Below are positions 8,831 to 62,233 of a stretch of DNA of 64,000 nt, in pieces (positions within the stretch are counted from its first letter, which is position 1; the number at the start of each line of letters is the position of its first letter). A program made the translations under genes and the position numbers. A model generated the notes under the pieces. It was not told the DNA's origin. It saw only the letters and a program-made list of their open reading frames with translations, and did not search any database. The DNA is from Ylistrum balloti. Its lineage: Eukaryota. The stretch spans positions 186,001 to 250,000 of the forward strand of contig NW_026782621.1 of NCBI RefSeq assembly GCF_031769215.1. The letters run 5' to 3'.

Positions 8831-10736
8831 TAGCAGCTTCCTTTATTTGGGGATTTTCATCAAACTTCACACTTACGAATTACTATAAAATCTGAAGGAA
8901 GTTTGAGATTTAATTTGTTGAAACAAATGATTTTATATCCGAAAATAAATGATAAGAAATAAAGTTCCGTTGTATCGTTAAGTTTGGAATCATTTTTCCG
9001 CGCTAAACAATTATTTTGGCGCAATAATAAAAAAAGAAAACAAACTGTTGAAGTTTTCAATAGCCTAAATTTTCAATAAATGTCACAGGAAAAATAAAAT
9101 AAAATAAAAACACGGTCAGTGTTTAAAATACAAGCTACATTTTGTCTCGGAAGAGAAATACAAATATGGCTAACTAAATGCTCGCCTCCTTTGTCTTTCT
9201 TCACTCTTATTAAAATACTGCTTAGGTTTGAAGATACCGACCATTTCTCTGTTTACAGCATTTTATTGGCAGAGGGGCGATAACTCTTATACACTAAAGA
9301 TGATCGACTGTATATGAGAATTCAATTGTTTCGTCCTTGGTATATTAGTAACATGAAATTAAACGATCAACTGAACTTATTTTGATTGACAGACAAATGG
9401 ATAATGGTTTAACATTTATAACCAGTGTCCAAATTAATAAGAATATATAATATATTTTGTTCAATATATATACTTTTTAAATGGCTCTTTAAACATTTTA
9501 GAATTGAATTATTTAAGTATTGTCATAACACAGCAACATTCACGGTTCTAGCAAAATTGTTCTGTTAAAAAGCCCGTGTTATTGAAATCTAAGGAAAATA
9601 TTAGAAACAAAAAAAAATCCACGAATTTAGTTCTTACTTTTAATATATTGCAGTAGATATTCAAAATATCTAGATATCTAAAGTACATTTTAGAGTAAAC
9701 ACAAATGTGACCAAAGGACATTCTCTATCATACTTTTGAAAATATCTAAGTAATATCAATATCTTTGAAGACTGATTTACTGCAGGCCGTGTCGTCACGA
9801 CAACATGTTAATTTACTTAATGTCCACATGTTGGTGTCTTTATTACGTAATTGTATAATGTATGTAGCTATAACTTTAGAGTTCAACAGGGAAATTAATT
9901 TGAGATCACTGGATTCATTAGTGTATACTTCATTCAAAACTATTTCCACTAAGACGACTTAAAAATTAAATACCGAGACATTGAAGTAGTATAAGATTTA
10001 CAATTCATCGTAAAAATGGGGAATTCTTTTAAACTTTATCCGAATTTGAACGTGTCGGTGCATTTGCTTTCTGAAACTGAACTAGGGAAACTATTTGTAT
10101 GCCTTTAAAGTTTTAGAATAAATTATTCTACTCTAGAAAGACATAATTTGCCTATTGCAACGAATTTTAAAGTTAACAAGACCAGTGAAAACGAACGTCT
10201 GGTATATCCGCTTTACAAGAGTAAACAGGAAGGACATCATTGACACAATTTCCTATATGACGTCTCGTGACACCATCATTGTTAAATTTATAAAAGGGAA
10301 ATAATTGCCTGTGAACATGACTAACATTTACGTTGTTGTTTCGATAAAATATACATAGTATGTATATGACTATCTGTATCTTAATAAGATCAGAAAACAT
10401 AAAAAAATAATGTCTTGATATGTTGATGTATTCATGCGGCTTTCATAAATACGTTTTCAGCACGTGTAATACCTGTTAACAACACACGATATGACGAATA
10501 CAAATACAATATCTCGACGCAATTCCCTCGTGTTATGTCGATTTCCAAGAAGATTGATTTTGTCCAGTAGATAAAACAAAAACGGATTTCAAATAATTTT
10601 AAGTAATGAACATTGATGATTTGGTTTATTCTTACTTCATATCACGTGTTATGTATGATATGGTGCCTCTGTAAACAGTTGAATTCCATGGTCATGTCAT
10701 TCGTCTTATGACCTGTTTGTTAAGATCATATCCAAA

Positions 10737-11478
10737 AACAGAACATTGTCAACGACTATCACAAACAGAACATTGTCAACGACTATCACAAACAGAACAT
10801 TTTCAATGTATATAACTAACAGAACATTGTCAACGACTATCACTAATAAAACATTATCAATAACTATCACAAGTAGGACTTTTTCAATGGCTATCAAAAA
10901 CAGAACAATGTCATTGACTATCACTAATAAAACATTATCAATAACTATCACAAGTAGAACTTTTTCAATGGCTATCAAAAACAGAACATTGTCAATAAAT
11001 ATTACAAACAGAACATTGTCTGACTATCACAAATAGGACATTGTCACTGACTATCAAAAACAGAACATTGTCAATAACTATTACAAACAGAACATTCGGC
11101 AATGACTTTCACAAACAGAACATTGTCAATAACTATTACAAACAGAACATTGTCTGACTATCACAAACAGAACATTGTCAATGACTATTACAAACAGAAC
11201 ATTGTCTGACTATCACAAACAGAACATTGTCAATGACTATTACAAACAGAACATTCGGCAATGACTTTTACAAATAGGACATTGTCACTGACTGTCACAA
11301 ACAGAACATTGTCAATAACTATTACAAACAGAACATTGTCAATAACTATTACAAACAGAACATTTGGCAATGACTTCACAAACAGAACATTGTCACTGAC
11401 TATCACAAACAGAACATTGTCAATAACTATTACAAACAGAACATTGTCAATAACTATTACAAACAGAACATTGTCAAT
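10737..11478. repeat. 27-bp minisatellite, about 27 copies, with a higher-order 81-bp duplication
   Basis: Consensus AACAGAACATTGTCAATAACTATTACA, with 25- and 28-bp variants. A 3-unit block at 10841 is repeated at 10922. It accounts for the periodic ORFs at 10706-11496. Confidence 0.95.
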
Positions 11479-12459
11479 GTAGCTTGCCCAGTACAAAATG
11501 TAGGATTAGATTCTATAGTCATTTCAACGTCAGCTAGTATGCTCCGGAGTTTCCATGAGGTGAGTAATTCCAATGGAAAATACGCAGGATAACTTGTTTC
11601 CTGGAATAGTCAATACAGATTTGATGTATTTCTTACCAGATTCTATATCTGCTGTTTGTGGAAACTTGAGGCTTGCAGATAGTCAAGAATACACACCATG
11701 TCCAATTCAAGCCCCTGTCTTTGTCGAATTTCCATTGCGTTTGCCTCACACTCGATGTAAAGTCCTTGGTTGATGAAATTACTCAGGTTGTTGGAGTCCG
11801 TCACTTGATATCTACTGCGCAGCTTGTAATGTTTGGCAAATACTTGACAGTATGAAGAGTTTAAATGTATTTAATTCATATATTTGGTTAAAATCTTGTA
11901 TCTGTAACTTTTTGGTTTCAAACTTTTCTTGTTCTTTCGTTAAGCAATACTTTTAACAAGAATCACAGTCCCTTTTAATAGTGTTTGGACAAACTTTTCT
12001 TCACCAAACTGTATATATGCTGTTGGAAATCATTTCTTTGAGTAAGACTTGGTAAAGTGACTAAACCGAGAGTCATTTGGGCTAATTGTATGTCCTGGAA
12101 TGTTGGTAACTTCTCCATTTTTCCACCATCACCCTAGTGATTCACTTCGCCTTTATTACAGATATAGTTATATGTTTTAGTAGTTTCCTGTAGTCTGTGG
12201 AATAGATGTTTATATCTCCTAATAAGTGACTCCTTGAGAACGGGAAATACCACATTATTGCGACATTAACACAGCTGTTCTATCAAATAAATACTTCCAC
12301 CTTGGCGTGGAAGGATTTCTAGTAACAATTAACATCGTTCTTTCCTTTTTCTCCTGTGTTTCTTCGTTCACAATCAGTTGGTTTGAGTACGTCGTCTTCT
12401 TTCAAATGATTACATACATCTTTGGGATCTACATCATCCACTAGAGCAATCCATTTCAG
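11479..12459 (-). pseudogene. Decayed third paralog of the CARD-CARD/helical-domain family (internal deletions, frameshifts, stops, 3' truncation)
   Basis: Manual minus-strand translation gives WIALVDDVDPKDVCNHLKEDDVL...RKERC*LLLEILPRQG (CARD1), LIEQLC*CRNNVVFPVLKESLIRRYKHLFHRLQE (end of CARD2), IHLNSSYCQVF, NLSNFINQGLYIECEANAMEIRQRQGLELDMVCILDYLQAS, TADIESGKKYIKS, YPAYFPLELLTS and KLRSILADVEMTIESNPTFCTGQA. All are collinear with the paralogs at 14505 and 21369. Confidence 0.9.
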
Positions 12460-13220
12460 CTGAAACAAGGAAACATATTATTTTTCATGGTGCAAAAATA
12501 AGGATTTCAACGAAACATCAGATGATATTCCACGACGAACCAACTGAACACAGGACGCGTATTGTTTATGTGATGTGAATAATAATGAGAGCACGTTCCG
12601 AAAGTCTATTTGTTTAGAGAGACTTTGCGTTCTTTTAAGATATTTCCTTAATGGTCATGATTAGATCCCCCGAATGAATGAATGTAAATTCTAGGAGTGA
12701 ATTAACATAACCTCTTCGCGACAGACATCATCAGCTTGAAGAGGAATGAAGGTTTTTAGGGGAGTGGGGGGACTTCATAATTCGCTAAGACGGAAAGGTG
12801 TCCAGCACTGGGAAATGTTACAAAAACACCCAATGTAAGGGGAAGTATCAAGTTAAGATTACTATAAGGTCAGGTATTGCTGCCAATTCTGCTATCATAA
12901 CATTTGTTTAGGACAATTTCAAGATAATGTCGACAAAGATTCAGCTGAATCCTACCCGGAACTTGAGAAGATGCCTTTCAAAGACACCTGTTACCTTGAA
13001 CGTGGGTCGAGGTCATTTATATTACCAAAATTGAAAGCCAATAACATGTAATTTTTTAGCCTTTGCGCCTTGTAGAATATGAGAATGAGTAAATTAAATT
13101 TATAATTTGTACTTTGACCCCTGCCAAAAACCGAAAGTTGGCATGTAACAAAAATTATTTCCTGAAAATAAATGTTATTTTCTTGTGATCCTATATAACA
13201 TATACATATCCAAAGATGGA

Positions 13221-13312
13221 TTGCGGCAATTTTTTTGTTTTTGCTTTTTTGTTTTTGTTTTTGCTTTTTTTGTTTTTTTTTTTGTTTTTTTTTTTGTTTT
13301 GTTTTTTTTTGT
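13221..13312. repeat. T-rich (TTTTG)n simple repeat
   Basis: Run of TTTTTG/TTTTGC units visible directly. Confidence 0.8.
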
Positions 13313-14504
13313 CACTAAATGGCAGAGGACATCTTGGAAACTTAAACTAAACTAAAGCGATTAATATAGGTATTTAACAAGTTTTAATAAATTGTCAGCG
13401 ATTTCGAAAGATCAAAACAAATTTTAAAAATGACCCAACAGCGAGATTTTTTTTATTTGAAATATTTTGTATTAACATGTAATGGGATAAGAATTGATAG
13501 AAATCGTCTACAAAAATATAATTGCACGAACTCTGTGCAAATCATGTCTGTTTCAGAGGTTTTAACTGAATTTTTTACATACTTTTAAAAAGTGGCATTG
13601 ACAACTCCAGATACATCCCTACAGCATACTACATGGACTATTGAACCTGTTTCTTACCGATCAAAATGATTAGGAGTCCACAAACTTCGGAAGAATTATT
13701 AAATAAGTATTTATATAATACTACAAATATTTATATTAATGACCGTAGTTACTATACAACAACTGTTCCGAGTATATCTAGACTAAATCAGATGTTTGAT
13801 CCACACGGGGATATAGTATACGGTTTACTTGCCGTAAACTACGGCATCGAATCCCAGTTTAAGGCGCCTACTCGTTCATCAGTCGCCATTTGTTTAAATC
13901 ACTATTGCAAAATTCCAATTATTGATTGACTGACTACTTTTTCCTGAAGTAGCCAACTACTGGATTATTTGTAGACTTATAGCTAATGTATTTTTGAGCA
14001 AACAGTCGATAAATGCATGGTGCCGTAGCTGTATAATTTCAAACAAAGAACCTTGAAAACATTTTAAACTGATCGGCTACTTTTTCCTCAAATACCGAGT
14101 ATGTACCCGGGTTATTTATAGGCTGTTTATGTTTTGTGGAATACAAATAGTCGATAAAACTACGGTGCCGTAGCTACATAGTTCGCAATCCTGACAACAC
14201 TGTAAAACTACCTGATGAACAAAAATTAAGTAATTACTGCAACACTACAACGAAACTAATTTATTATATAGTTTTCAAGTAATAAAAATCACCAATACAT
14301 TTAAACACAAATTTACTAATATATGGGACACAATAATCAATGAGAATTTGAAACATTTCAGTTATATCCAAATATCTGCCATCACTTTTAATATGACCAA
14401 CGTATTCAGATTAAAGTGACGATGTCGTCCATTTTCTGTCAATGAAATATTTATGATTGTACAATAAAATCCATTTAAGAATATAATCGAAAGCAAATGT
14501 GCCT

Positions 14505-16613
14505 TCAACTGAATGCAGTGTTACCTCTTAAATAAATATTACCTGAAAGATCAATTGAATCTGTGAGCAATTCGGCATCCATCTTTGAATGCAGGAAAGT
14601 TATTCTATTTTGAGCTTGTTCCTTGAATTCTAAAATACTGTTGTTAACTGCAAGAAGGAATGCTTCTTCGGCATATTCTAAAGCCCTGAGTACATGTTTC
14701 CGACGATAATGATAGTCACTCTTTGCTAAGAGGAGAGGGACTTTTAAAAATGCTGTAATCGGAATGTCAGAATCTTCCAGTTGACGCAGATACTTTCCAG
14801 CAAGTTCAATATCTTCAACACTTGGCAGTACGTCTTCTCTATACAGGCCCCTGTCTCCACAGCGAAGTAACAAAATGATGAGTCGGCACAAAGCAAAACC
14901 GAACCCAAATGGTCCGTCATTTCCTTCTTCCCGCTTAAAATTATCCAAGGATTTCTCACAGCTTTTCTTGGCTATTTTGTAAAGATGTTCGTACACGGAT
15001 GGATAGGTTGATCTTTGGGTGTTCAACATTGATATTTGTACCATAATATGTTTAACGTCATTCATATACAACCAGCCAGCCGCTCGTCCTGTACAACTGG
15101 TAGGATCTGCCTCAATCATCATTTTGGCATCATCTAGAGTTCTCTGTAGTTTTTCAAACTTTTTCTTGATACTTAACATTCGCGTTTGAGATGTTAGTAA
15201 TTCTAAAGTAAAATATTTTGGATTATTTGTTTGTCGTGCTAATTTAAACCCAGTTTTTATGTATCTTTTAGCAGAATCCACATCCACTGAATGCAAGAAC
15301 CGGCTAGCGAACAGGTAATCAAGAGTACACGATATATCCTTATCACTGCCTTGTTTTAGTCGAATTTCCACCGCACACTTCTCAAATTGATCATACCGTC
15401 CTTGATTTATTAATGTACTTAGAGAGTTGAACACAATTTCGTGACCTCTTTTATGTAAATTTCTTGACTGTGGTAACACATTGAAATGAGTCGGAACTAA
15501 TGACATACTTTCCGTAAATTTGGACTTAGAAGATAGTTTTTTTCTTTGACGCTTAATCCTTTCCTCCTGCTTTTTATGTACTATATTTCTCGCAATGTCC
15601 TCTTCGGATGTATCCGAATAAATTGTTGTTTGATGACACTGCGTGTTCTTCAATGATCGAGAAGAATAGTTTCCAGGGTATTTGGTTGTGTGAAAATACC
15701 GATCATAACTCGATAATTCGACGTTAGTTGTGACCCTAAAATCTAAATTGTCGGTATTGTAGACGCCTTTTGCTTCAGAATTCGTTAAGAAAGACATATC
15801 CAGATTTGGGATCAAAAGTGTTGACACTGATGTAGGTGTTTTCACTTTACTGACTCCAAGACCCCTACGCATCACTTCAAGGAGAATTGGATGAGAACAT
15901 TCCTCACCAATCTCTTCTTCTGAATGCTTAGGAACGACTGGAATCTCTACTTTTATTTCCCTAAGTCTTTGTGCTATGTAACCATACTTTTGTCGTAGTG
16001 ACTCTCTAAAAATGTTAAAAACGTTGTCATGGCCACATGTTGATAGCTTCTTTAACAGGGCAATGCATCTGTCTCTTCGGGTTTTCTCTGATTTTATCGA
16101 TTCATAGTCATGTCCTTCTAAAATGGATTCTTGGTACAACAAATCTAAGAGGTCGTTCACTTCTACATTTTGTAATATCAAACAACAGTTTTCTTGTATT
16201 GCTGTTCTCAAACTTGGGTCGACAATGTAAACTGGAATAAACGGCTGACAATTCAAACATACTTTATGTTTTCTTTCTTTTGAAGGGGGACTGTTTCTTA
16301 TACTCTCGCAGCCATCGACACATTCATATCTGGCCACAGTACTTTCCGTTCCGTGCAATAATTCTTCTAGATGTGAACAGCTCTGTTTTAAAGCATTCTT
16401 AAAAGAATAATACGCGTCTGGACCACGAGTAGGAAGAATTCCCAGCAGCTTCCGACATCTTTCCTTTCTTGTTTTACCCGTATTGATAAGTTCATGGTCA
16501 CTTTCAGTAAATATTCCATCTTGTTGTAAATAATCAAAAACTTCATTCGGATCCAGCTCGTCTACCAGAGTGACATAATTTCTTCGAAGGATTTTCTGCT
16601 GTTCGTCGTACAT
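14505..16613 (-). CDS. Tandem-CARD (2xCARD) protein with C-terminal alpha-helical (TPR-like) domain, 702 aa, single coding exon
   Basis: Uninterrupted ORF. CARD1 is RNYVTLVDELDPNEVFDYLQQDGIF...RGPDAYYSFKNAL (caspase-2/RAIDD/Apaf-1-type signature). CARD2 is LILQNVEVNDLLDLLYQESIL...FNIFRESLRQKYGYI. A splice acceptor TTGCAG|GTTTG (exon starts 16624) lies just before ATG 16613, so the first 22 ORF residues are probably not translated. Stop TGA at 14505. TPR-like is an inference from the amphipathic helical pattern. Confidence 0.88.
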   Translation of the reverse strand: MYDEQQKILRRNYVTLVDELDPNEVFDYLQQDGIFTESDHELINTGKTRKERCRKLLGILPTRGPDAYYSFKNALKQSCSHLEELLHGTESTVARYECVDGCESIRNSPPSKERKHKVCLNCQPFIPVYIVDPSLRTAIQENCCLILQNVEVNDLLDLLYQESILEGHDYESIKSEKTRRDRCIALLKKLSTCGHDNVFNIFRESLRQKYGYIAQRLREIKVEIPVVPKHSEEEIGEECSHPILLEVMRRGLGVSKVKTPTSVSTLLIPNLDMSFLTNSEAKGVYNTDNLDFRVTTNVELSSYDRYFHTTKYPGNYSSRSLKNTQCHQTTIYSDTSEEDIARNIVHKKQEERIKRQRKKLSSKSKFTESMSLVPTHFNVLPQSRNLHKRGHEIVFNSLSTLINQGRYDQFEKCAVEIRLKQGSDKDISCTLDYLFASRFLHSVDVDSAKRYIKTGFKLARQTNNPKYFTLELLTSQTRMLSIKKKFEKLQRTLDDAKMMIEADPTSCTGRAAGWLYMNDVKHIMVQISMLNTQRSTYPSVYEHLYKIAKKSCEKSLDNFKREEGNDGPFGFGFALCRLIILLLRCGDRGLYREDVLPSVEDIELAGKYLRQLEDSDIPITAFLKVPLLLAKSDYHYRRKHVLRALEYAEEAFLLAVNNSILEFKEQAQNRITFLHSKMDAELLTDSIDLSGNIYLRGNTAFS

Positions 16614-19600
16614 TATCAACAAACCTGCAAAGATAAGATAGTTACCATAAATTTTACCACAACTGGTACATAGTAACAATGCATCAAAATTAGATATACC
16701 GTGTCTTTAAAATTAAAAAAGTAATACAAAGTGACATTTCACATCGTTATAACAATAGTGAATATTTGCATCTTCCCTCGAAATATCTTCATCCAGATAT
16801 TTGTCAAAATGTACCTGACAAACTGTCGCTCATTATCATGGATTAGATGCCATTGACATTATCATATATGAATTCCCTGATATCAATAGGAATATGTTAT
16901 GCACTGTCTATTTATCTTCATATTTCGACGAATACAACAAAGAAAAGACATACAATTTTCTGCATATCTCCACGTCTTTGTGAACAGAAACATCTACACA
17001 TCTACATATCCTGATGAACACAAAAACTCCATTCCCAAATCTACATATCTTCATGTCTTCATAACAAAAGTCACAAATAAGTCATACAGTTTTCTTCATA
17101 TGTTAATGTTTTGATCAACAAAAATGTCTTCATACCTTAATGTCTCGATGAATTCATGAAAAAAGCCATACAGCTATCTCCATGTCTGAATGTCTTACAA
17201 CTATCTCTTGTACATATCTTCATACTTGTTAAATACTACCTACATATATACATGTCACCGACCTACGTGTATCTAAGTATATACGTCCTCTCAAATACAG
17301 GAGACACAGCCATCATCACATAAGAAAGATACATTCAGCCGTTAAAATGTTACTTTCTCTAGTTTACCACTACATGTTGTTGTATATGTTAAAACTCGTA
17401 CCAAATCAAATTTGAGGGTACACTATACACATAGCTTCGCCATTATATCTACTACATATGATGTACAGTATGAAACAATATGCATGGAAACTGGAATATA
17501 GTTTTAAGACATCAAATTTGAAAAAAAACATTGTATTTATACTAAAAAAACAAAAAACAAAACAAAAAGACAGACGTTGTAAGCAACATATTATGATATC
17601 CTACCTGTACTTTCACCAGAAAACTTCATGTAACAGAGTTGCTCTACATTAGAGATGACTACGTAGAAAATTTCTAAATTCGTAGCCCGAAGTTGAATGT
17701 TACAGTTGGTCTACATCCGCCTGCATTACCGTAGCGATTACAGCACAGCTTATGTCGTTTAACACTGTAGTAATGAGAGGACGGAAGTTAGCTAACTTAT
17801 GGATACTTGCTTATATGTGCAAATACTCTGAAAATTACATTTTAACATGGCGATCGATATGCCGGTTATGTGATAACAATACATACCAGCAATAAAACAG
17901 TATGGGCATACAGAAAAGTGACTTTAAAAGGAAAGATGGCGGAGATTGAGAAAATGACACATATGGGTGGCTAACAAAGAGGTTTACACTCTATCAAAAG
18001 TATATGTGTGGTTATCACATTACAGAGGCAACCGGCAGCAGTTAACACCAGGGATTGTGTTACTGTTTAACACACATGTGTATTATGTGATGGCCTCATA
18101 CAAGATCTTTCACTTTAATGCAGTGTCAGATAAACATGTCTGAAGAAAAACAAAAATCGATAACTATAACAGAAACGAACAGCATGTATTTCTGTCGACA
18201 GTAATTAATATCGGTCTTTCTAATCGAACTTTTATGAAATAGAGTGTCTCGATGTTATTGTACTACAGTCACTAACCTCGTCTGTAAATACACATACATG
18301 TATATACAATTGAAGGTACGTAACTCTACCGGCCTTCCGAAGCGACCTAATTTAGGAAGGATTATCATTGCTAAACCACTTAATATTTCTCGCTGGGAGT
18401 GCTCTGAATCGACAAACAAATACCTTTTCTTCAATTTGATATATAATTCACTATATAAAATGCCTTTGAGTTATCGCTAGATTTCATCATATATATTTTA
18501 ATTGTCAAATTTGTGTTAGTCGGACAGTCATCTAGCAGCGATCTGAATCATTACATGTACGCGATTCAACCTCAGTGTTAGACTAATCAGTCACTTACTT
18601 ACTATTGTGCTAGTTCCATTTCTCTGGTTATCTTGTCAAACATTGAAGCTCAGATTTAAAGCCTACGATGCACAGTCATACCTTTAAATGTAAGTAGTCC
18701 AAACAGGTTCAAGCTTTCATTGTTAACCACGTGTAGTGGGATTTACAGAAATTTATTTTGATGCGTATACACATAGATGAGGCCGATCCCAGACTATTGT
18801 AAGCGTGACGTAAACAGTTACGGACCAGTGGTCGCGTTATTCATTACTGACTACGAAATTTATTTCGCTGATATTTTATTTAACATGGTATGTAAAACAC
18901 GCGTGTAATATCATCTGTTATTATTAATGATTAGATATGCTTACATACATATTGTTTGTTAATTTATTTTTATGTGGCTTAATTAATATTTTAAACTATA
19001 AATATTTTTACTGGAAATACCCAGTTTGAAGAAAAAATCATATTCTTGGTATGACTACTAACGATTTGGGACACATTTAGTTTTCTCTCGCGACGTTCAT
19101 TCGCTTACAGTACACTTTTGATTCGTGTCTTATTTCATATTTGAAAGAGGGCGCCGGAAAATTTCTTGTCAAACTAATCTAACTCTACTTTTATCATCGT
19201 TCACGAATCGGTTCCCAGTTCATATCCTGTAAATTCACAATTCTATTTTAAGCGATTACACATTACACAGAAAACCCCAAACGGCATAATTAGTCACTAG
19301 AAACTAGTATGACTTCACTAAAACATTTCGTATCATAAAAAAGTTAATATTCTTTTTTTACAACGAATAATTATAGGTAGACAGATTGGTCATATTGCCC
19401 CTGCATAAACGATATATCAAACATCTTCTGAAGTGGAAATGTATCAGTCATATAAAGGGAGTTTGAAGAAACTCTTTATTGTTTAGAATTAGCAAAAAGT
19501 AAGTCAAAATAAACAAAGCATGTTCGATTATACAAAATTAGGGTCTGTATAATGTCTTCGGCTAACGTAGACAGCTATTATTTAAATGATACCTGTTGTA

Positions 19601-21368
19601 ATAGATCCAATAATCAATGTTTTTGGTTAGAGGTGATTTCTATCCTGGTGTTTCATGGTTTTATATTGGTACTTGATACATGTATCTATATTTCTGTTTT
19701 GTTTGCTTTATATTTGTTTTCCCTCATTATTTCTTACGACATGTATCATAAGGAAATTTAAATCCGATCAATATGATCCTGTCAGCCATGGCTTTGATAC
19801 TTATTTATGTGTTTAAGATTTATCTTATAACAGTTCCTTCCCAAATTTATCCAAACAAAAAGACAATGTGAACGTAAACAGGCATAGCTTTGCTAGATTA
19901 TCTTTTCAGTATTATCAAACAATTTGTTCAATATGTCTATCTCTTCATTTATGTGCAGAATATCAAAAAGGCTCGATAGATTAACCTTGAAAAAAACAGA
20001 ACACAAAACACTGGCTGATCTTACCACCATGCCAATAAATCACACTTGTGGTTGTTACTATCGCTATTTATATCAATAACCATATAAATCTCACGATGTA
20101 TACATTTTATAATGTGCTCTACGGCAGGGTCGAATTTACTGTTGGATTAAGATCCTCGTCTACCAGCAATTGTAGGATTGCACACTCTAGGAAAGGGCAA
20201 GTTCTGGAATTTCAACCCACATGCAGTTGTAGATGAATTGTCTCGGGTAAGAAGAATTGTGATATATCTATTATACACAAAGAATGACAGAAAAAAATGA
20301 TGTATTCGATGTAATTGCGCATGTTTCGGACGAAAGCCGCGGGTGTGGTCTTTTGCTGTATGTTTCATCCGAGCTGTAATTGGACTGTTGTTCTTGTTTT
20401 AATCATTGTTTATTTTTATAAGCATAATGCAGTCAAACTTGCCTATAGACGCCACGCAATGAAGCAGAAATAAGTTACCTTGATAAGCAAGTAGTCTTTA
20501 TATAAAGATAATATGACCATAATATGTACAACATAAGGTCCCGAAATCATTGGCATTTATAGATATTTTTCATGAACAACAATAGCTGTTTAGCTCATTG
20601 TTTGGCTCTACTCTATCTCACTCTAAATTATGAAAAGGTGCTATTCACTTGTGTACAATCTTTAAGCATGTATGACTGTAGTAGTACATAAATTATGTAC
20701 ATTTCCACACCTATTTTCTTGGTAATCATATACATGTCCTTTTATTGAGTTCATCAACGGAGTGCAGCATAATAAATATCAATAACGATACTTTAATTGA
20801 ATACTGGTTAATTTTAACTGTTTATGTCAATATACAATCTCTACGTATGCATACTGTTCATATTACAGACAGTGGCTGTATGTGTAACAGTTCGGTATTT
20901 CCAATACAACACGTAACTAATCACACATAAAACGCTATATATAGTGCGTGTCGTATGTTGAATGTGATCTTCTTCCACGTAACAACGTTGTTTATTTTGT
21001 ATTCCACAATTGGTAGTATATTACTTGATACAGATCTGAAATGCCCCAGATTAATACAGACTATTTTCATATGCATACAGGTAATTAGAATTCTCTGATC
21101 TTCAATCAGTTCTGTTATAATTCAAAATATCATCAAGGAAGATTGAAACCACGAATGGAATGTATACCGTATTAACTGTACGCGACGATGCAGAGTAAAA
21201 CACTCGTCCTACACCACATAACGTAACAAAGTGTTTAGCACGATTGGCTATTGCGTCGTATCATCATGATGGTCCCAATCATTGATTTTATGTTATTGTC
21301 AAGTTCAGCTGTGCACTGAGGAAACTCACCCGGTTTTGAGCCTGTTCCTTGAATTCCAAAATGTTGTT

Positions 21369-23303
21369 TTAAGTCAACCGTAGAGCATCTCCTGCGTATT
21401 CCAGAGCCCTTTGTGTGTGTTTACGCCGATAATGATAGTCACTCTTTGCTAGGAGGACAGGCACCTTAAGAAAAGTGGTAATTGGAATATCGGAATCTTC
21501 GAGCTCCTGCAGATGTTTTCCAGCGATTTCGATCTCATGATCTGGCGCTGTACTGTCCTCATACTGACCCTTATCCCCACACCGAAGTAACAAGGTGACC
21601 AGTCGGCACAAAGCAAAGCCAAACCCGAAAGGCCCATCTTTACTTTTGTCACGTTTAAAATGATCTAATGATTTCTGACAGCTATCCATGGCCTGCTTGT
21701 ACAAATGTTCGTACAAGGATGAGTAATATGATCTTTTGGGGTTTAACAAAAACATTCGAATCATTATTTTTTTTACATCATTCATATATAACCAGCCCGC
21801 AGCTCGCCCTGTACAACTGTTAGGATCGGCTTCTATGATCATTTTTGCATCATCTAGTGCGTTCTGAAGTTTGCCGTGTTTTTTCTTTATTATCAACATT
21901 CGCGTTTGACAAGTGAAAAATTCTAGAGTAAAATACTTAGGATTACATGTTTTTTGTGCTAATTTGAATCCAGACTTTATATATGCTTTAGCAGAATCTA
22001 CATCAGCAGTATTTAAAAACCTACAGGCGAATAGATATTCTATAGTGCAAATCATGCCGATATTGCTACTCTGCCTTTGTTGGATACCCAGGGCGCATGC
22101 CTCAAACTCTTTGTAAGAACCTTGGTTTACTAATGTACTGAGGTGATTGAAAACTAAATCTTCTTTTGTGTTAAGTGGATCACAAGGCTGAGTGAAAAGT
22201 TGGCAATGTGATGTGCTTAAATGTATATATTTTGTAATAACATGCGAGGATAATGAAGTTCCATTTCTTTTCCGACTTTTTAGTGTCTCATGGGATCGAC
22301 ATGCATTGTTGTTTCCACAGTTGTTCTCTAAAATGTCAGCTGAAAACGTTGATGGGACACGACAGTTCGAATGAGAATATGTTGAGTTCCAAAATCGAGT
22401 TTTGATAGAGAGTTTTCTATCGAGCTTTTCCGTTAAGTCAAGTTCATCAAAACTATCGTTACATTCGTCTGTGGTGTCTGTTAAAACACATTCAGGCAAC
22501 GGAGAGGAAATCCTTTCAGGCACTGGAAAGTCCGATGTTTCTCCCGGCATTACTTTAGGGAGAATGAAATATGATTTCCGGTCATTCCTTTTAGCATTCG
22601 CTGAAGATACATGCACTTCCGTGACTTCTTCACTGACTATGTCAATCCTATCGGCTATGAAGGCATATTTTCTCTTCAATGACTCTTTGAAAACATTCAG
22701 CATCTTACAATTTACGCGTTTTGATAGTTTCTGTAAGAACGCAATACATCTGTCTCTTCGGGTGTTCCTCGATCTGATCCATTCACAGTCGTTCATATCT
22801 ATAATATTTTCTTGATAAAACAAATGTATTAAATCGTTCGCTTCTACATTTTCTAATATCAAACAACAATGTTTCTGTATGACATTATCTAAACCTGTGT
22901 TGCTAAAGGTAGCTGGCAGGTACGGTTGACACCTGTGGCATATTCCGTTGTTTCGACAATTTTCCGATTCTTGTCGGTAATTTGCTTTGTAGGAGACGTT
23001 TACACGTAAGTCATTTATCGTGCTATTATTTGAAGACGTTTCAGGAAGCAATTTTTCCAAATGAGAATAATTATGTGTTAATGCTTTCTTAAGTGAATCA
23101 TACGCACACGGGCCACGCCTGGGAAGAATTGCTAGTAGCATAAAACATCTTTCCTTTCTGGTTTTACCCGTATTGATAAGTTCATGATCACTCTCTGTAA
23201 ATAATCCGTCTTGTTGTAATTGATCAAATATGTCGTTTGGATCCAGCTCATTCACCAAAGCAACATGGTTCTTTTGAAGGATTTCCTTTTGGTTGTTGTA
23301 CAT
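21369..23303 (-). CDS. Paralogous 2xCARD + helical-domain protein, 644 aa, terminated by a premature TAA
   Basis: Collinear with 14505-16613, for example CTGRAAGWLYMNDVK, GPFGFGFALCRL and LLAKSDYHYRRKH. It has the same acceptor context TTTTAG|GTTTG (exon starts 23317) and ATG at 23303. After the TAA at 21369-21371 the frame continues NNILEFKEQAQNRVSFL to a TAA at 21288. Confidence 0.85.
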   Translation of the reverse strand: MYNNQKEILQKNHVALVNELDPNDIFDQLQQDGLFTESDHELINTGKTRKERCFMLLAILPRRGPCAYDSLKKALTHNYSHLEKLLPETSSNNSTINDLRVNVSYKANYRQESENCRNNGICHRCQPYLPATFSNTGLDNVIQKHCCLILENVEANDLIHLFYQENIIDMNDCEWIRSRNTRRDRCIAFLQKLSKRVNCKMLNVFKESLKRKYAFIADRIDIVSEEVTEVHVSSANAKRNDRKSYFILPKVMPGETSDFPVPERISSPLPECVLTDTTDECNDSFDELDLTEKLDRKLSIKTRFWNSTYSHSNCRVPSTFSADILENNCGNNNACRSHETLKSRKRNGTSLSSHVITKYIHLSTSHCQLFTQPCDPLNTKEDLVFNHLSTLVNQGSYKEFEACALGIQQRQSSNIGMICTIEYLFACRFLNTADVDSAKAYIKSGFKLAQKTCNPKYFTLEFFTCQTRMLIIKKKHGKLQNALDDAKMIIEADPNSCTGRAAGWLYMNDVKKIMIRMFLLNPKRSYYSSLYEHLYKQAMDSCQKSLDHFKRDKSKDGPFGFGFALCRLVTLLLRCGDKGQYEDSTAPDHEIEIAGKHLQELEDSDIPITTFLKVPVLLAKSDYHYRRKHTQRALEYAGDALRLT

Positions 23304-26239
23304 TTTCTTCAGCAAACCTAAAACAATGATATGTTTGTAATTTAAGCGTAATGATATAAGCATTTATTACTGTAATCTCTGAATACAACTGCTTTGCATA
23401 ACACATTACAACATCTAGTGCATGAATGTTTTATATCAGAATAATGCATATCTAATAATATAATTTTCTTTAAAATAAGAAAGAAGAAAGTAATTCAAAT
23501 TAACAACGGTTTTATATTCAAATCAAAGAAGTTTTGTTGTTGTCTCTTTAATTCTAAGATATTTTCCTTTTGATGTCAGCAGTAGGAGTTTTGATATTGT
23601 CAACGATGAGATTTTATCACGGATTTAAAAAAAACCCACACAAGCTGAGGAATACAAAATTTAGCTAAGTCATAAATAGTCTCAATTCAACTTCGTGTAT
23701 TCATAATCAAAACACTTAGCTTTGAAATAAATTGGAAAGCGAACCGCAAATCAACGTCAAGGTTAACATTTGTAGACAAATTTTATCAATATGTTAGAGA
23801 TCTCAGAAAACAAAAAATAAGGATTTGAATCTGGATTATTTTTGCGTCCTTGTACCTTATTCTGAATTTGTACAGAAATGTGTTATCGCGAATTTTTGCT
23901 TTCTGGCTATCTTTCATACGCTATGCAGGTTTCTGCCGATCGATTACACTGTGAAACGGAGTCACCTGTGTTTACGTTATTTACATTGTACTAAGTATTA
24001 TCATTTTTAAGTAAATTTTAATTGTCTTTACTTCTAATATACATAAGTGATGACACCTTACCTTCTAATCCGATAAACCATATATCTGTCCCTCTTCCTT
24101 CAGTGCCGTTTTGCTTTGGCACAAAGGAGAATTGATCACATAATTTGCTATTTTTAGCCTATTTGTAAGACCAACCACCTCCCCTTCAGTGTAGGTTCCA
24201 CGAATGCACCTCTTGACATTAACTGCTGCATAATGCCTATTCTCTTTCCTTGTTAGCATTACCCGATCGTGCAATAGCTCTATTAAATGTGTATTACATT
24301 CAGTTGTTCATAATTTTAAAAAACCAGCAACATGTACCCTACTGATCTCTAGTCATATGCTCTTTATTTATTTATGCACAAGTCAGTCGTAGATAACTTC
24401 GTTTTATTGTTAGACGTGGAAGGATTTTTTCCAGAACTAAACATACATTTAAATGCAAACAGATAAAGACACTATGCTGGGTTCACGTAGTCTATTATAC
24501 TGTTTTATTTGTTTAAATAGACTAGATTTCAATACAAAGGAAGGAGCGGCTTTTAACTGGTATAATTCCTTCTGACATTGGTTCAAAAATGCTTCACAAT
24601 GAAGTGAATACAATGCACGCGTTAGAGCGACGAACCACTATTAACCTAAGCAATTCTCAACTCCAACTTTACAATACAAGGAGCTCTTCTGCTAGTACAT
24701 GTTTTATATAATAAAAAATAAAGATATTATATAGTTATTCACTTTTGTGTGTTTTGTACAATCTCTACATTTACATCTGAGGTATGTACGTTTCCCATTT
24801 TAGTGAAAAACAAACCCAAACGGCATGATAAAAGCGAGTGTATTCAAAAGCGAAAGATTTATTCATTTGATATCAATATATATTTTGACGATGTAAATCA
24901 CATAAAAGAGATTACAGAAAGCCTTTTAGATGACATATTAGAATTCGAACAGCTATAGATACATTTAATTGACGTTTCCAAAAATGTTTCTGTTTGATAT
25001 AATGTTAATGGTTAAACATTCCGTTATAAATAACATTGATATCACACCACACGTGAAGTGGTAGTGTTTGCCCTTAGACATCAATTAAGGGTTTTCAGGT
25101 GTATTTGATGTGGTTGGGTTATCGATGTTCAATGAGTTTGTAGAGATAAAATATCATAACAACTTTGTATCACTTGATAAACATATCATTTATACTGATA
25201 AATAAGCTGTACTGATAATCTATGTCTGAAGTTGATTATGTTCCTATTTGCAGATTGAAAGTAAACAAGAGGCCCATTGGGCCCCGCTCCTCTCGCCATA
25301 GGGACCCTACAAGAATAGCTGAATTATTCTCTTTATTATGTAGCGTTTAAAATCATGACGATATCATGTTCGTGGAGAGGACGTTTTTGCAACACTATTG
25401 CTTTAATGCTATGATGTGACTTATCGACAATATTTATTATTACTTCATATAACATGGCATGTTTTGCAAGAAGTCGTTGTGACTTCCAAAGTACCATTGT
25501 TGCAAACTTATTGTAATAAATTATTTATTGTTAAAGTTATTACATTAAGGAATTGCAATAAGCTGAAATATATTACGGTCAACAACGCTTATTGTTATAA
25601 ACACATGATTTATTACAATAAGGTTAACTGTAATGTAATTATTACTTCATAAGACAAACTGTGGCAAAATACATCTACTCTCAGTCCAGCACATCATTCT
25701 TAAAGTAATTTCTCGTAACTTCGTAGTGGACTCAATCCGCATAACGTGCTTCTTAAATTATTATGTTTTGATAACATACAACTAAATAACATACTGAAAA
25801 CAATTCTACATGATTTTTTTCTAAAAAAAACCCCACTAAAATCATAATGTAAGTGGCTAGAATTGGCCGTGCGACCTGTAATTTTTTAAAGCCAGTCAAC
25901 AGGGAGAACCTACGTGTTACGTTTGAGATAAATATGTTTGTTTAGATATATTGCTATAGCAATAATCTTTTGTTTGCAGTAGAACGACAGAGAGATAACG
26001 AGCCACAAGCCGTGTTGATAGGCTATCCATTTCATTAACTGGATTAACAAGGGGGGGGGGGGGTGTCATTGTTACCACAATAGTATATGTAAAGCCACCA
26101 ATACTATTACTCCCGTCCGCCTTTAGATACTCGTATAAAAATCATTTTTGTTTCAGTTTTCGGTTTTGTCGCTATACTTGTGATCGGGTTGTCGAATATG
26201 CAGTGCAGATCTAAATATACAATGCACACACAACTGTTT

Positions 26240-60933: not shown

Positions 60934-61925
60934 TCAGTCTTTTTTCGTATCGTCATTGTCATTATCCATGTACTCCAGTTTTGATTCAATTCCTACTTTT
61001 TTAAGTTCTTCAATTAATTCTCCACTTTTGTGCATCTCAAATAAAATGTCGCAGCCACCAATAAATTCACCTCCAAAGAAAACTTGTGGTATAGTAGGCC
61101 ATTCAGTGTAATCTTTGACACCTGGAAAAAACAAGAGAAAAACAATAATGGTATGAAGAGAAATGTTTTCAACTCATTTTTTTTTTAAATTCATGTGAAG
61201 AAAGATCCAAAGTGAAAATCAAAGAACAATCTAATGAAATATCATTCACTTCCTTATTTACTATAGTGTAAAGTATGGAGTGAAACACAAAATCTGATTG
61301 GTGCCAAGTGAATTGTGAGATCTTATTTTCTACATCTACTTCTTAAGTATTCTGATAAACTTCTTATACACTGGTTGCTGAAGACGTGAAGTACAGAAGA
61401 AAAGAGAAATAATGTTTAGTGGAGATGGAGACATATCTTGTGGATTTGGTTCCATTGAGTAAAACTGGATTTGAATTAAATTGATTAAACAGAGAACTGT
61501 CCTGTTAAATTCAGTTATTAATTTATGACAGTTTCAACAGCAAGCAATTCATCAAAATGAGGAAACATGTTACATTATTTTATCACAAGATCTATAGCAG
61601 TAGTATTTTTATCACACATAACAGTAAAAAGTCATTTTTGCACGATAACTAATTACTGACCTTGTCTCATATCTTCATCTGCGAGGACATTGTGTGCATC
61701 ATATTGATTCACTCCGTGAACGTGCAAGATCTGTACAACAGCATTGCTGAAGCCACATCGAGGAGTCTCGGGAGTGCCTTTCATGAACACAACAACAGGT
61801 TTGTCTTTTACAATTGCCTCAATAAACTCTTTTGAGCCAGATTTCGCAGAATAATGTGCGGCAAGCAGTCGCGAATATGACAAACTCTTTGAAGGAAGCA
61901 CCATGCGTCGCAGAAGGGCACTCAT
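60934..61925 (-). CDS. GLRX5: Glutaredoxin-5, mitochondrial monothiol CGFS glutaredoxin, 150 aa, 2 exons (61661-61925, 60934-61121)
   Basis: Arg/Ser-rich transit-like N-terminus [67 protein letters not shown]. Phase-1 intron G|GTCAGT...TTCCAG|GT; TGA at 60934. Confidence 0.96.
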
Positions 61926-62233
61926 GATTGTAACTGATAGAAAATGCCCTAGCGCATTTCCGGTATATATCCTTCCAATTCCGGCTGTAGAATAAAAATA
62001 GTGCAATATATCAACTACCAATACTGACTGTATTTAAATTAAAATGTATCATTCTAACACATTTTGAATATTTTAACGATTATGCTTCTTATCTTACTGT
62101 TTCTTTTAAATCAATTAATTTCGTTTATGCAATATTTTTGGCGTATTAATCTCTTGTAAAGTTGTAAACTTCCGGTTAGCGTGTCACTGGTGTCACTTCA
62201 AGCACATGCAGTGGGAAAAGAGGCTGGGCTGAC
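61926..62233. promoter_or_regulatory. Putative bidirectional promoter with ETS/GABP-type site
   Basis: Only 308 nt separate the divergent start codons. ACTTCCGG (CCGGAAGT on -) lies at 62168-62175. Confidence 0.55.

What the first reader, a model, noticed from the sequence alone, without database searches (positions are those of the whole stretch)
11479..23303. Three-copy cluster of 2xCARD + helical-domain proteins lacking any NTPase or protease domain: a candidate uncharacterised innate-immune/cell-death sensor family
Seen: three same-strand paralogs share the layout CARD-CARD-variable linker-conserved helical domain of about 290 aa (roughly 60% identical between the two long copies, by eye). 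No P-loop (GxxxxGK[ST]), QACRG caspase site or DExD helicase motif is present. Known: tandem N-terminal CARDs are the signalling module of RIG-I/MDA5 and NOD2, where they are coupled to helicase or NACHT domains. Inference: here 2xCARD is coupled directly to a TPR-like solenoid with distinctive conserved blocks (CTGRAAGWLYMND, GPFGFGFALCRL..LLLRCGD.G, LLAKSDYHYRR). This could be an NTPase-free receptor/adaptor or an RLR/caspase decoy. The copies span intact, truncated and dead states, the birth-and-death pattern typical of immune gene families.
Basis: partly seen in the sequence, partly recalled or inferred. Interest (0 to 1): 0.78.

Follow-up and report, generated by a model that had tools for sequence, protein, structure and literature searches.

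The report
Scallop tandem CARD-CARD-TPR adaptor genes
Three neighbouring scallop genes (one intact, one with a stop codon that another individual lacks, one dead) belong to an undescribed family, conserved in molluscs, an annelid and a brachiopod, of enzyme-free proteins that join two caspase-recruitment domains to a TPR-like helical domain; they are candidate caspase-activating adaptors in animals reported to lack Apaf-1.

Summary
The window comes from the scallop Ylistrum balloti. It carries three same-strand paralogues:
- A (main exon 14543-16624) is intact and corresponds to RefSeq LOC132560955.
- B (21369-23363) ends at a TAA stop. Another sequenced individual reads GAA (Glu) there, as does the Pecten orthologue.
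- C (11478-12468) is a decayed pseudogene.

A and B each have two Pfam CARDs, a disordered linker and a roughly 300-residue C-terminal domain with no Pfam family. AlphaFold models that domain with confidence as a 14-helix TPR-like superhelix.

No P-loop, caspase or helicase domain was found in any of about 140 family members scanned.

The family is not scallop-specific. It occurs in bivalves, gastropods, a chiton, Lingula and Capitella, with 66-67% TPR identity between a scallop paralogue and Lingula or Lottia. Distant death-fold+TPR relatives occur in a coral and in amphioxus.

CARD1 is closest to the Apaf-1 and RAIDD CARDs, not to RIG-I or MDA5. The named core members come from molluscs, an annelid and a brachiopod. 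A 2024 paper reports that these same groups lack Apaf-1, PIDD and ASC and share a clade-specific CARD caspase, caspase-Y.

Best reading: a non-enzymatic CARD adaptor that recruits CARD caspases. The A/B/C cluster is a faster-evolving scallop offshoot. No function was tested and no RNA data were available.

The parts
17604..17629 (-). Copy A, small 5' coding exon of the RefSeq model (MKFSGEST + first base of a Gly codon)
   Evidence: tblastn of P0001 residues 1-9 at 17629-17603. The phase fits the exon-2 acceptor read.
14543..16624 (-). Copy A, main coding exon (LOC132560955). It encodes CARD1, the spacer, CARD2, the linker and the TPR-like domain.
   Evidence: ORF. P0001 is 99% identical. Acceptor ...tttgcag| at 16625-16626 and donor G|gtaata at 14541-14542.
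16350..16613 (-). Copy A CARD1 (model residues 1-88)
   Evidence: Pfam CARD. The family profile matches the Apaf-1 CARD at 2.6e-15 and RAIDD at 7.9e-15. AF2 gives a helical bundle with pLDDT about 93.
15954..16262 (-). Copy A conserved CxxC motif plus CARD2 (model residues 118-220)
   Evidence: Second Pfam CARD stretch. The profile matches CARD8, Apaf-1 and ASC CARDs at 2e-6 to 8e-6. CARD1 and CARD2 profiles are related at hhalign 99.5%, E 2.3e-23. pLDDT is above 90 from about residue 121. The CxxC is conserved.
15471..15947 (-). Copy A disordered Ser/Thr/Lys-rich linker (model residues 223-381)
   Evidence: pLDDT is 31-43 in most blocks, with one weak helix at 338-356 (blocks 60/49). Identity to the Pecten orthologue is 37%, against 80% in the TPR domain.
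14550..15470 (-). Copy A C-terminal TPR-like superhelix (14 helices)
   Evidence: AF2 pLDDT 89.8, pTM 0.87. Foldseek and VIA-align match TPR proteins. 28 columns are invariant across 30 members.
12434..12459 (-). Last coding piece of RefSeq isoform X2 of copy A (AEMDCSSG + stop). It is spliced into the old exon-2 acceptor of dead copy C.
   Evidence: P0001 C-terminus located. The acceptor ttccttgtttcag| and the reading frame are seen.
21369..23363 (-). Copy B ORF (664 aa): 2xCARD, linker, TPR-like domain. Orthologue of Pecten LOC117323290.
   Evidence: The tree gives 99/96 support for B + P0004.
21369..21371 (-). Copy B premature TAA stop. It reads GAA (Glu) in another individual.
   Evidence: Sequence. 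Run X1 has C instead of A at 21371. Codon effect. The Pecten orthologue has E at this position.
21288..21368 (-). Copy B, in-frame continuation after the stop. It encodes the conserved last helix (NNILEFKEQAQNRVSFL...) up to the next stop at 21288-21290.
11478..12468 (-). Copy C, dead paralogue. The front part of CARD1 (through the LPxxG loop) is joined to the end of CARD2. The linker and about half of the TPR domain follow, with stops and frameshifts.
   Evidence: tblastn of A, B and P0001. ORF fragments.
10736..11479 (.). 27-bp minisatellite (27.7 copies) that abuts and truncates copy C
   Evidence: Tandem Repeats Finder.

Best explanation
The locus is a tandem cluster of three paralogues of a family found in molluscs, an annelid and a brachiopod.

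The family consists of non-enzymatic death-fold adaptor proteins. Each protein has two N-terminal CARDs that arose by internal duplication. CARD1 is of the Apaf-1/RAIDD type. A flexible linker follows, then a strongly conserved seven-hairpin TPR-like superhelix.

Shown here: the architecture, the fold, the absence of any NTPase, protease or helicase domain, the phyletic spread, and the state of each copy.

Inferred mechanism:
1. The TPR domain binds a conserved cellular partner or ligand, or self-associates.
2. This brings several molecules together.
3. The clustered CARDs then nucleate CARD-CARD assemblies that recruit and activate CARD-prodomain caspases (caspase-2 or the clade-specific caspase-Y).

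The protein would thus work like RAIDD or ASC, as an NTPase-free bridging adaptor, rather than like Apaf-1 or an NLR.

A and B are a scallop-specific, faster-evolving duplicate pair that lost the acidic C-terminal tail of the ancestral type. B carries a segregating or assembly-specific nonsense allele. C is dead.
For: CARDs:
- Pfam finds two CARDs in each of A and B.
- CARD1 and CARD2 are homologous at hhalign E 2.3e-23.
- The CARD1 profile best matches the adaptor-side CARDs of Apaf-1 (2.6e-15) and RAIDD (7.9e-15). CARD8 and caspase-9 come next. RIG-I and MDA5 reach only about 1e-3.

Structure:
- The TPR fold is modelled at pLDDT 89.8, pTM 0.87. It matches peptide- or ligand-binding TPR domains: APPBP2, APC subunits, MalT domain III, Rap/NprR/AimR, LGN.
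- The linker is disordered.
- There is no transmembrane segment.

Family content:
- No P-loop or caspase motif was found.
- Only CARD, Death and TPR Pfam families appeared in about 140 members.
- A profile search of 1.84 billion representatives returned only 163 clusters. The partners seen are death-fold domains.

Conservation:
- The TPR domain of the scallop paralogue LOC132557496 is 66-67% identical to those of Lingula and Lottia. This argues for a conserved partner.

Phyletic spread:
- Named members come from bivalves, gastropods, a chiton, Lingula and Capitella.
- PMC11463336 reports that APAF-1, PIDD and PYCARD are absent from exactly molluscs, annelids and brachiopods, and that caspase-Y is specific to them.

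Origin of the cluster:
- The tree places A with Pecten LOC117323289 and B with Pecten LOC117323290, on a long stem (0.58) inside the scallop clade.
Against: - No binding, expression or induction data exist. No RNA run was available.
- Similarity to the Apaf-1 and RAIDD CARDs is similarity on short domains. It is neither a phylogeny nor an interaction test.
- The authors of PMC11463336 propose CRADD as the activator of these caspases, so no activator is strictly missing.
- The match in phyletic spread rests on named hits only.
- A distant relative exists in a coral (E 3e-10) and a weak one in amphioxus. Related Apaf-1 homologues are described for a cnidarian (Nematostella) and amphioxus (PMC2246300).
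- TPR fold matches are generic and say nothing about the ligand.
Confidence: 0.45

Rival explanations
1. Antiviral RLR/MAVS-pathway component. The tandem CARDs would mimic the 2CARD module of RIG-I or MDA5. They would either relay a signal to mollusc MAVS (as a helicase-free sensor or adaptor) or act as a decoy that damps RLR signalling.
For: - Tandem N-terminal CARDs are otherwise the mark of RIG-I and MDA5.
- Several family members carry a precomputed hit to CARD_2 (PF16739), the RIG-I/MAVS-type model. A itself hits it at 6.6e-05, below the cut-off.
- Oyster RIG-I and MAVS signal through CARD-CARD contacts (PMC5557890).
Against: - The CARD1 and CARD2 profiles match RIG-I and MDA5 CARDs only at about 1e-3 to 7e-3, against about 1e-15 for Apaf-1 and RAIDD.
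- The two CARDs are separated by a spacer of about 45 residues that is partly disordered. This differs from what I recall (not tested here) of the closely joined RIG-I 2CARD unit.
- No helicase, C-terminal regulatory domain or transmembrane anchor is present.
Confidence: 0.2
2. Direct pathogen or danger sensor. The TPR superhelix would bind a microbial or viral molecule, for example RNA ends as IFIT proteins do, or peptides as Rap/NprR/AimR do. Ligand-driven clustering would release the CARDs. This is an NTPase-free receptor.
For: - Foldseek lists IFIT5 (E 4e-3, TM about 0.5) and peptide-sensing RRNPP proteins among the matches.
- MalT domain III, a STAND sensor domain, scores Z 19.4.
- The TPR domain of A has net charge +7.
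- The scallop cluster shows duplication, relaxed constraint and gene death.
Against: - The fold matches are equally good to many unrelated TPR proteins.
- The TPR domain is among the best conserved parts of the protein, at 66-67% identity between a scallop paralogue and Lingula or Lottia. This fits a conserved endogenous partner better than an arms-race ligand. It does not exclude a conserved microbial pattern.
- Copy number is low, a few per genome.
Confidence: 0.12
3. The scallop-specific A/B copies are regulators rather than signal carriers. Having lost the conserved acidic tail, they would act as dominant-negative partners of the ancestral paralogue (LOC132557496) or of CARD caspases, like vertebrate CARD-only proteins.
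For: - The A/B clade sits on a long stem branch (0.58) and lacks the ...EExxRILFE(D/E)SS tail that most other members have.
- B tolerates a truncating allele. Among the differences listed between two haplotypes, 12 are non-synonymous and 8 synonymous.
- The PDB hits include ICEBERG, a CARD-only inhibitor, but only at 1.2e-6.
Against: - A and B keep both CARDs, the full TPR domain and all signature motifs.
- A-type and B-type orthologues have been kept since before the Pecten/Ylistrum split. This argues for a retained function of the whole protein.
- Nothing is known of what the tail does.
Confidence: 0.13

Closest known systems
RAIDD/CRADD (CARD + death domain adaptor of the PIDDosome)
   Same: Both are small non-enzymatic adaptors. 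Both have an N-terminal CARD of the same sequence type: the CARD1 profile hits the RAIDD CARD at 7.9e-15. Both presumably act by bridging an upstream partner to a CARD caspase.
   Different: RAIDD has one CARD and a death domain as its second module. This family has two CARDs and a TPR-like superhelix of about 300 residues, with no death domain.
Apaf-1 / CED-4 family (CARD - NB-ARC - WD40 or TPR)
   Same: The CARD sits at the extreme N-terminus and is most similar in sequence to the Apaf-1 CARD (2.6e-15, collinear from residue 1). A repeat 'sensor' domain lies at the C-terminus. Per PMC2246300, a Nematostella Apaf-1 homologue has two CARDs and some homologues carry TPR repeats instead of WD40.
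   Different: There is no NB-ARC domain or P-loop anywhere in the family. ATP-driven ring assembly therefore cannot apply. Whether the family descends from an Apaf-1 paralogue that lost its NTPase was not tested.
RIG-I / MDA5 tandem-CARD signalling module
   Same: Two consecutive N-terminal CARDs act as the presumed output module.
   Different: Sequence similarity is weak, about 1e-3. A spacer of about 45 residues with a conserved CxxC lies between the CARDs. No helicase or C-terminal RNA-binding domain is present.
TPR ligand or peptide-binding domains (APPBP2, APC subunits, MalT domain III, Rap/NprR/AimR, LGN/Pins, IFIT5)
   Same: The overall fold is the same: a right-handed superhelix of about seven helical hairpins. 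VIA-align Z is 15.5-20.8 over 231-275 residues. Foldseek TM is about 0.5.
   Different: Sequence identity is 6-15%. Pfam TPR models stay below their cut-offs. The family's own signature blocks (CTGRAAGW..., DGPFGFG.ALCRL...LLLRCGD) are not those of any listed family. The matches are generic for TPR proteins.
Mollusc MAVS (CgMAVS: CARD + death domain + C-terminal transmembrane anchor)
   Same: It is a CARD-bearing, non-enzymatic signalling adaptor of molluscs.
   Different: CgMAVS has one CARD, a death domain and a transmembrane anchor needed for self-association (PMC5557890). This family has no death domain and no transmembrane segment.

Membership tests
CARD (death-fold) domain proteins, Pfam PF00619 | Sequence match to the CARD model above its gathering score | tested here: met
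   A scores 101.1 bits and B 74.3 bits against a 23.9-bit cut-off, with two stretches each.
CARD (death-fold) domain proteins, Pfam PF00619 | Compact helical bundle of about 90 residues | tested here: met
   AF2 gives helical bundles at residues 1-88 and 133-218 with pLDDT above 90.
RIG-I-like receptors | DExD/H-box helicase core and C-terminal RNA-binding domain after the 2CARD | tested here: not met
   No helicase or RIG-I C-terminal-domain Pfam hit. The region after CARD2 is a disordered linker followed by a TPR-like domain.
STAND NTPases (Apaf-1/CED-4 NB-ARC, NLR NACHT) | P-loop NTPase domain between the death-fold and repeat domains | tested here: not met
   No NB-ARC or NACHT hit in A, B or about 140 relatives. 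No Walker A motif in the core family.
Caspases (peptidase C14) | p20/p10 catalytic domain with a QACxG active site | tested here: not met
   No Peptidase_C14 hit. No QAC[RQG]G in any collected member. The UniRef name 'Caspase-2' for a Mizuhopecten member is therefore a misnomer based on the CARD.
MAVS | Single N-terminal CARD and a C-terminal transmembrane anchor | tested here: not met
   Two CARDs are present. The highest 19-residue hydropathy is 1.65 and lies inside a TPR helix. The C-terminus is not hydrophobic.
RAIDD/CRADD | CARD followed by a death domain | tested here: not met
   No Death (PF00531) hit in A or B. Only the CARD is similar.
TPR superfamily | Tandem helix-turn-helix repeats forming a superhelix | tested here: met
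   The AF2 model has 14 helices, with pLDDT 89.8. VIA-align Z is 15.5-20.8 to TPR proteins over 231-275 residues.
TPR superfamily | Sequence match to a Pfam TPR model above its threshold | tested here: inconclusive
   Only sub-threshold hits were found: TPR_2 at E 0.16 in B, and TPR_12 in 8 of 30 members with best E 0.0026.
IFIT proteins | TPR fold with a positively charged RNA 5'-end pocket, and interferon or virus induction | not testable with these tools
   Only a generic fold match to IFIT5 was obtained (E 4e-3, TM about 0.5). There was no sequence match. Model coordinates and RNA data were not available.

The most novel reading that the evidence does not exclude
The 2xCARD-TPR family is the missing CARD-caspase activation platform of molluscs, annelids and brachiopods. 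It would be an NTPase-free functional substitute for the apoptosome. It may descend from a two-CARD, TPR-bearing Apaf-1 paralogue that lost its NB-ARC domain. It would partner the clade-specific caspase-Y and/or caspase-2 in animals reported to have lost Apaf-1, PIDD and ASC.
Probability: 0.22. Interest if true: 0.85.

Novelty: new variant of a known kind. Interest (0 to 1): 0.6.

Why it matters
Molluscs, annelids and brachiopods are reported to have CARD caspases, including the clade-specific caspase-Y, but no Apaf-1, PIDD or ASC (PMC11463336). How their initiator caspases are switched on is therefore open.

This family has four properties that make it a concrete candidate adaptor:
- an Apaf-1/RAIDD-type CARD;
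- deep conservation;
- no enzymatic domain;
- a phyletic spread, among named members, that matches the Apaf-1-less clade.

It was apparently missed by searches that looked for orthologues of vertebrate activators. The hypothesis can be tested with simple CARD-CARD binding assays.

The family also defines a conserved, unannotated TPR-like domain that could be added to domain databases. That would correct misleading names such as 'Caspase-2'.

For aquaculture species such as scallops, clams and mussels, it adds a likely cell-death or immune signalling node.

Tried and rejected
Searches on the C-terminal domain that gave nothing specific:
- Pfam, NCBIfam and PDB sequence searches found nothing beyond sub-threshold TPR hits.

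MAVS identity was considered and rejected. Oyster MAVS is CARD + Death + transmembrane anchor.

Literature searches that found no description of the family:
- domain-combination terms;
- scallop and Lingula gene IDs;
- 'tandem CARD' with mollusc terms.

Expression could not be tested. The only public run that holds the locus is DNA contigs of another individual.

Taxon identification of unnamed members failed:
- A word search with the Capitella member found only itself.
- A word search with P0093 found only unnamed relatives.

Other limits:
- Model coordinates are not exposed. I could not map conserved residues onto the TPR groove. I could not check whether the four conserved cysteines around CARD2 sit together or whether the CARDs dock on the TPR domain.
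- dN/dS between A and B was not attempted, because at 49% protein identity synonymous sites are saturated.


Full report
**What is there**

The window is eukaryotic and AT-rich, with GC of 0.30-0.39 per 2-kb bin. It comes from the scallop Ylistrum balloti: the best database match to copy A, at 99% identity, is 'uncharacterized protein LOC132560955 isoform X2 [Ylistrum balloti]'.

Two long minus-strand ORFs stand out, A at 14505-16679 (724 aa) and B at 21369-23363 (664 aa). They are 49% identical overall. Over the C-terminal domain they are 68% identical.

A third copy, C, lies at 11478-12468 on the same strand. It is about 33% identical to A and B and has stop codons, frame changes and internal deletions. 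It ends where a 27-bp minisatellite (10736-11479, 27.7 copies) begins.

In C, the front part of CARD1 (through the 'LPxxG' loop) runs directly into a segment that fits the last helices of CARD2, the family pattern 'NV..VLK.SL..KY.F'. I checked it only by BLAST and by eye.

**Gene structure**

The RefSeq protein P0001 maps to three pieces:
- a short 5' coding exon near 17604-17629;
- the main exon 14543-16624, with acceptor ...tttgcag| and donor G|gtaata;
- a last coding piece at 12434-12459.

That last piece uses the acceptor 'ttccttgtttcag|', which is the old exon-2 acceptor of dead copy C. The start of C's CARD1 is read in another frame and stops after eight codons. So the annotated isoform X2 of the live gene splices into its dead neighbour. 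I could not check this with reads.

**Copy B is not simply truncated**

Its ORF ends at an in-frame TAA (21369-21371). The same frame then continues with the conserved last helix (NNILEFKEQAQNRVSFL...).

The only public run that holds this DNA (X1) is genomic contigs of another individual, about 1.3% different. It covers the intergenic DNA as evenly as the gene. In X1, position 21371 is C rather than A, which turns TAA into GAA (Glu). The Pecten orthologue also has Glu at this position.

X1 shows no frame-breaking indel in B, only an in-frame CAA insertion. None of the 20 other listed substitutions makes a stop. Of these, 12 change the protein and 8 do not.

B is therefore a gene under relaxed constraint with a nonsense allele in the assembled individual. 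An assembly error cannot be excluded.

No protein matching B appeared among the word-search hits, where it should have ranked about fifth. It is probably not annotated as coding.

**Domains**

A and B each score twice for Pfam CARD: 3.5e-29 and 7.8e-21, against a 23.9-bit cut-off.

Family profiles of CARD1 and CARD2 are clearly related to each other (hhalign 99.5%, E 2.3e-23). This indicates an internal duplication.

Matches of the two CARD profiles against solved structures:

| Target CARD | CARD1 | CARD2 |
|---|---|---|
| Apaf-1 | 2.6e-15, collinear from residue 1 | 6e-6 |
| RAIDD | 7.9e-15 | 8.5e-5 |
| CARD8 | 8e-11 | 2e-6 |
| Caspase-9 | 4e-9 | not listed |
| ASC | 1.4e-3 | 7.5e-6 |
| RIG-I | 1.3e-3 | 6.5e-3 |
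| MDA5 | 3.3e-3 | not listed |

A spacer of about 45 residues separates the CARDs. It holds a nearly invariant C-x-x-C (C.KC..F.P) about 20 residues before CARD2. CARD2 itself starts with a conserved CC.

In the full-length AlphaFold model:
- both CARDs have pLDDT above 90;
- residues 91-114 and 223-384 are mostly below 50, so disordered;
- confidence rises to above 90 just after the CxxC.

The C-terminal roughly 300 residues have no Pfam or NCBIfam family and no PDB sequence match. Modelled with a 30-sequence alignment, they fold with high confidence (pLDDT 89.8, pTM 0.87) into 14 helices, or seven hairpins.
- Foldseek finds LGN/Pins, NprR, Rap and IFIT5 at TM about 0.5.
- The exhaustive VIA-align search gives APPBP2 Z 20.8, an APC/C subunit 19.6, MalT domain III 19.4, and Rap, AimR and PlcR 16-19.

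The matches are generic and do not name a ligand.

No transmembrane segment exists. No P-loop, caspase site or helicase domain is present.

**The family**

A word search with the C-terminal domain returned 50 proteins of 531-999 residues, all with CARD. They come from scallops, other bivalves, Lottia and the brachiopod Lingula, at 45-79% identity apart from the window's own protein.

A profile search of 1.84 billion representative proteins found only 163 clusters at E no greater than 1e-3.

I scanned 30 of the more distant members singly and 62 as a set. The only Pfam families found were CARD, CARD_2, Death and TPR-type repeats, plus a few isolated weak hits.

Named members include:
- Haliotis, the chiton Liolophura and the annelid Capitella teleta (E 8e-52);
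- more distantly, a Stylophora coral protein (E 3e-10, no recognisable CARD);
- an amphioxus protein with three death domains (E 6.6e-5).

A subfamily of about 1000-1190 residues comes from unnamed eukaryote assemblies. It has the same plan with a much longer linker.

So the C-terminal module is a death-fold-associated TPR domain, and no member scanned has an NTPase.

**Conservation and the origin of the cluster**

Percent identity by region:

| Region | A vs Pecten orthologue | Ylistrum LOC132557496 vs Lingula |
|---|---|---|
| CARD1 | 83 | 53 |
| CARD2 | 67 | 43 |
| Linker | 37 | 13 |
| TPR domain | 80 | 66 |

The TPR domain of LOC132557496 is also 67% identical to that of Lottia. A's TPR domain is only 48% identical to Lingula's.

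In a maximum-likelihood tree of the TPR domain:
- A groups with Pecten LOC117323289 and Mizuhopecten LOC110456944;
- B groups with Pecten LOC117323290 (support 99/96);
- the A+B clade sits on a long stem (0.58) inside the scallop clade;
- the slower paralogues lie next to it.

The two Pecten genes have consecutive IDs on one contig. The A/B tandem pair therefore predates the Pecten/Ylistrum split.

Most family members end in an acidic tail '...EExxRILFE(D/E)SS...'. The A/B clade has lost it.

Birth-and-death evolution is thus real, but it is confined to this scallop offshoot. The family as a whole is old, low-copy and constrained.

**How it probably works**

Shown here: two CARDs of the adaptor type, a flexible tether, a conserved TPR superhelix, and no enzyme domain.

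The following rests on established knowledge of death-fold signalling rather than on tests here. CARDs signal by forming helical assemblies once they are brought close together. Adaptors without an NTPase, such as RAIDD, ASC and MyD88, are clustered by an upstream partner.

The most economical mechanism is therefore:
1. The TPR domain binds a conserved partner or self-associates.
2. The CARDs cluster.
3. CARD-prodomain caspases are recruited and activated.

Published context makes this attractive. PMC11463336 reports that APAF-1 is lost in molluscs, annelids and brachiopods, and that PIDD and PYCARD are not detectable. It also reports that a CARD caspase, caspase-Y, is specific to just these groups. 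The authors propose CRADD as the activator.

The named core members of the present family come from the same groups.

PMC2246300 notes that a Nematostella Apaf-1 homologue has two CARDs and that some homologues carry TPR repeats instead of WD40. Descent from an Apaf-1 paralogue by loss of the NTPase is therefore conceivable, but I did not test it.

I put the caspase-adaptor reading at about 0.45.

**Rivals**

- An RLR/MAVS-pathway adaptor or decoy (0.2). It is weakened by the poor match to RLR CARDs and by the spacer between the CARDs.
- A direct TPR-based sensor of a microbial molecule (0.12). It is weakened by the strong conservation of the TPR domain and the generic fold matches.
- A regulatory, dominant-negative role for the tail-less A/B copies (0.13).

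**Limits**

- No expression, induction or binding data could be obtained.

**Verdict**

This is an undescribed but database-visible family: a new variant of the death-fold adaptor theme, 2xCARD fused to a private TPR-like domain with no NTPase. It offers a testable link to the open question of how CARD caspases are activated in lophotrochozoans. Interest 0.6.

Noticed in passing
window 12434-12461 and 14541-14543 (-): The RefSeq isoform X2 of live copy A splices from its 3' donor (G|gtaata) into the preserved exon-2 acceptor of dead copy C. It reads C's CARD1 start in another frame for eight codons (AEMDCSSG, then stop). This is a read-through splice from a gene into its pseudogene neighbour.
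   Followed up: partly
window about 16190-16262 (-); alignment A4 columns for residues 119-145 of copy A: A nearly invariant CxxC (C.KC..F.P) lies about 20 residues before CARD2, and a CC sits at the start of CARD2, across the family. AlphaFold confidence rises from about 40 to above 90 just after the CxxC. This may be a zinc knuckle or an N-terminal cap of CARD2.
   Followed up: partly
C-termini of family members (alignment A1, columns 300-344): Most members end in an acidic tail with a conserved '...EExxRILFE(D/E)SS...' motif. The scallop A/B clade has lost it. It could be a docking motif or an auto-inhibitory peptide for the protein's own TPR groove.
   Followed up: no
window 10736-11479: A 27-bp minisatellite (27.7 copies, 82% matches) lies directly against the broken end of copy C. 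Its units give the long spurious 'VIVIDNVLF' and 'TITNRTLS' ORFs on both strands.
   Followed up: partly
window 21369-23363 compared with run X1: The second haplotype of copy B differs at about 1.3% of positions. Among the listed differences, 12 are non-synonymous and 8 synonymous. It also has an in-frame CAA insertion after 22519. This suggests relaxed or diversifying selection on B.
   Followed up: partly
window 20500-20700: In run X1, contig depth jumps about 100-fold (to about 1113) around 20590-20655, with many loose ends. This is probably a short high-copy repeat or transposon fragment between copies A and B.
   Followed up: no
window 61653-62021 (-): An ORF fragment matches Pfam Glutaredoxin (5.9e-09). 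It is probably an exon of an unrelated neighbouring gene.
   Followed up: no
L001 (ENA ERZ25074796) and proteins P0090-P0097, P0207-P0212: A subfamily of 960-1190 residues comes from unnamed eukaryotic assemblies. Each protein is encoded as a single ORF. The plan is an N-terminal CARD, about 500 residues of low-complexity linker, a second CARD-like segment and the same TPR-like domain. The taxon is unknown.
   Followed up: partly
P0005 (Mizuhopecten LOC110457563): UniRef names this family member 'Caspase-2', although it has no caspase domain. The name is an annotation error that propagates from the CARD.
   Followed up: partly
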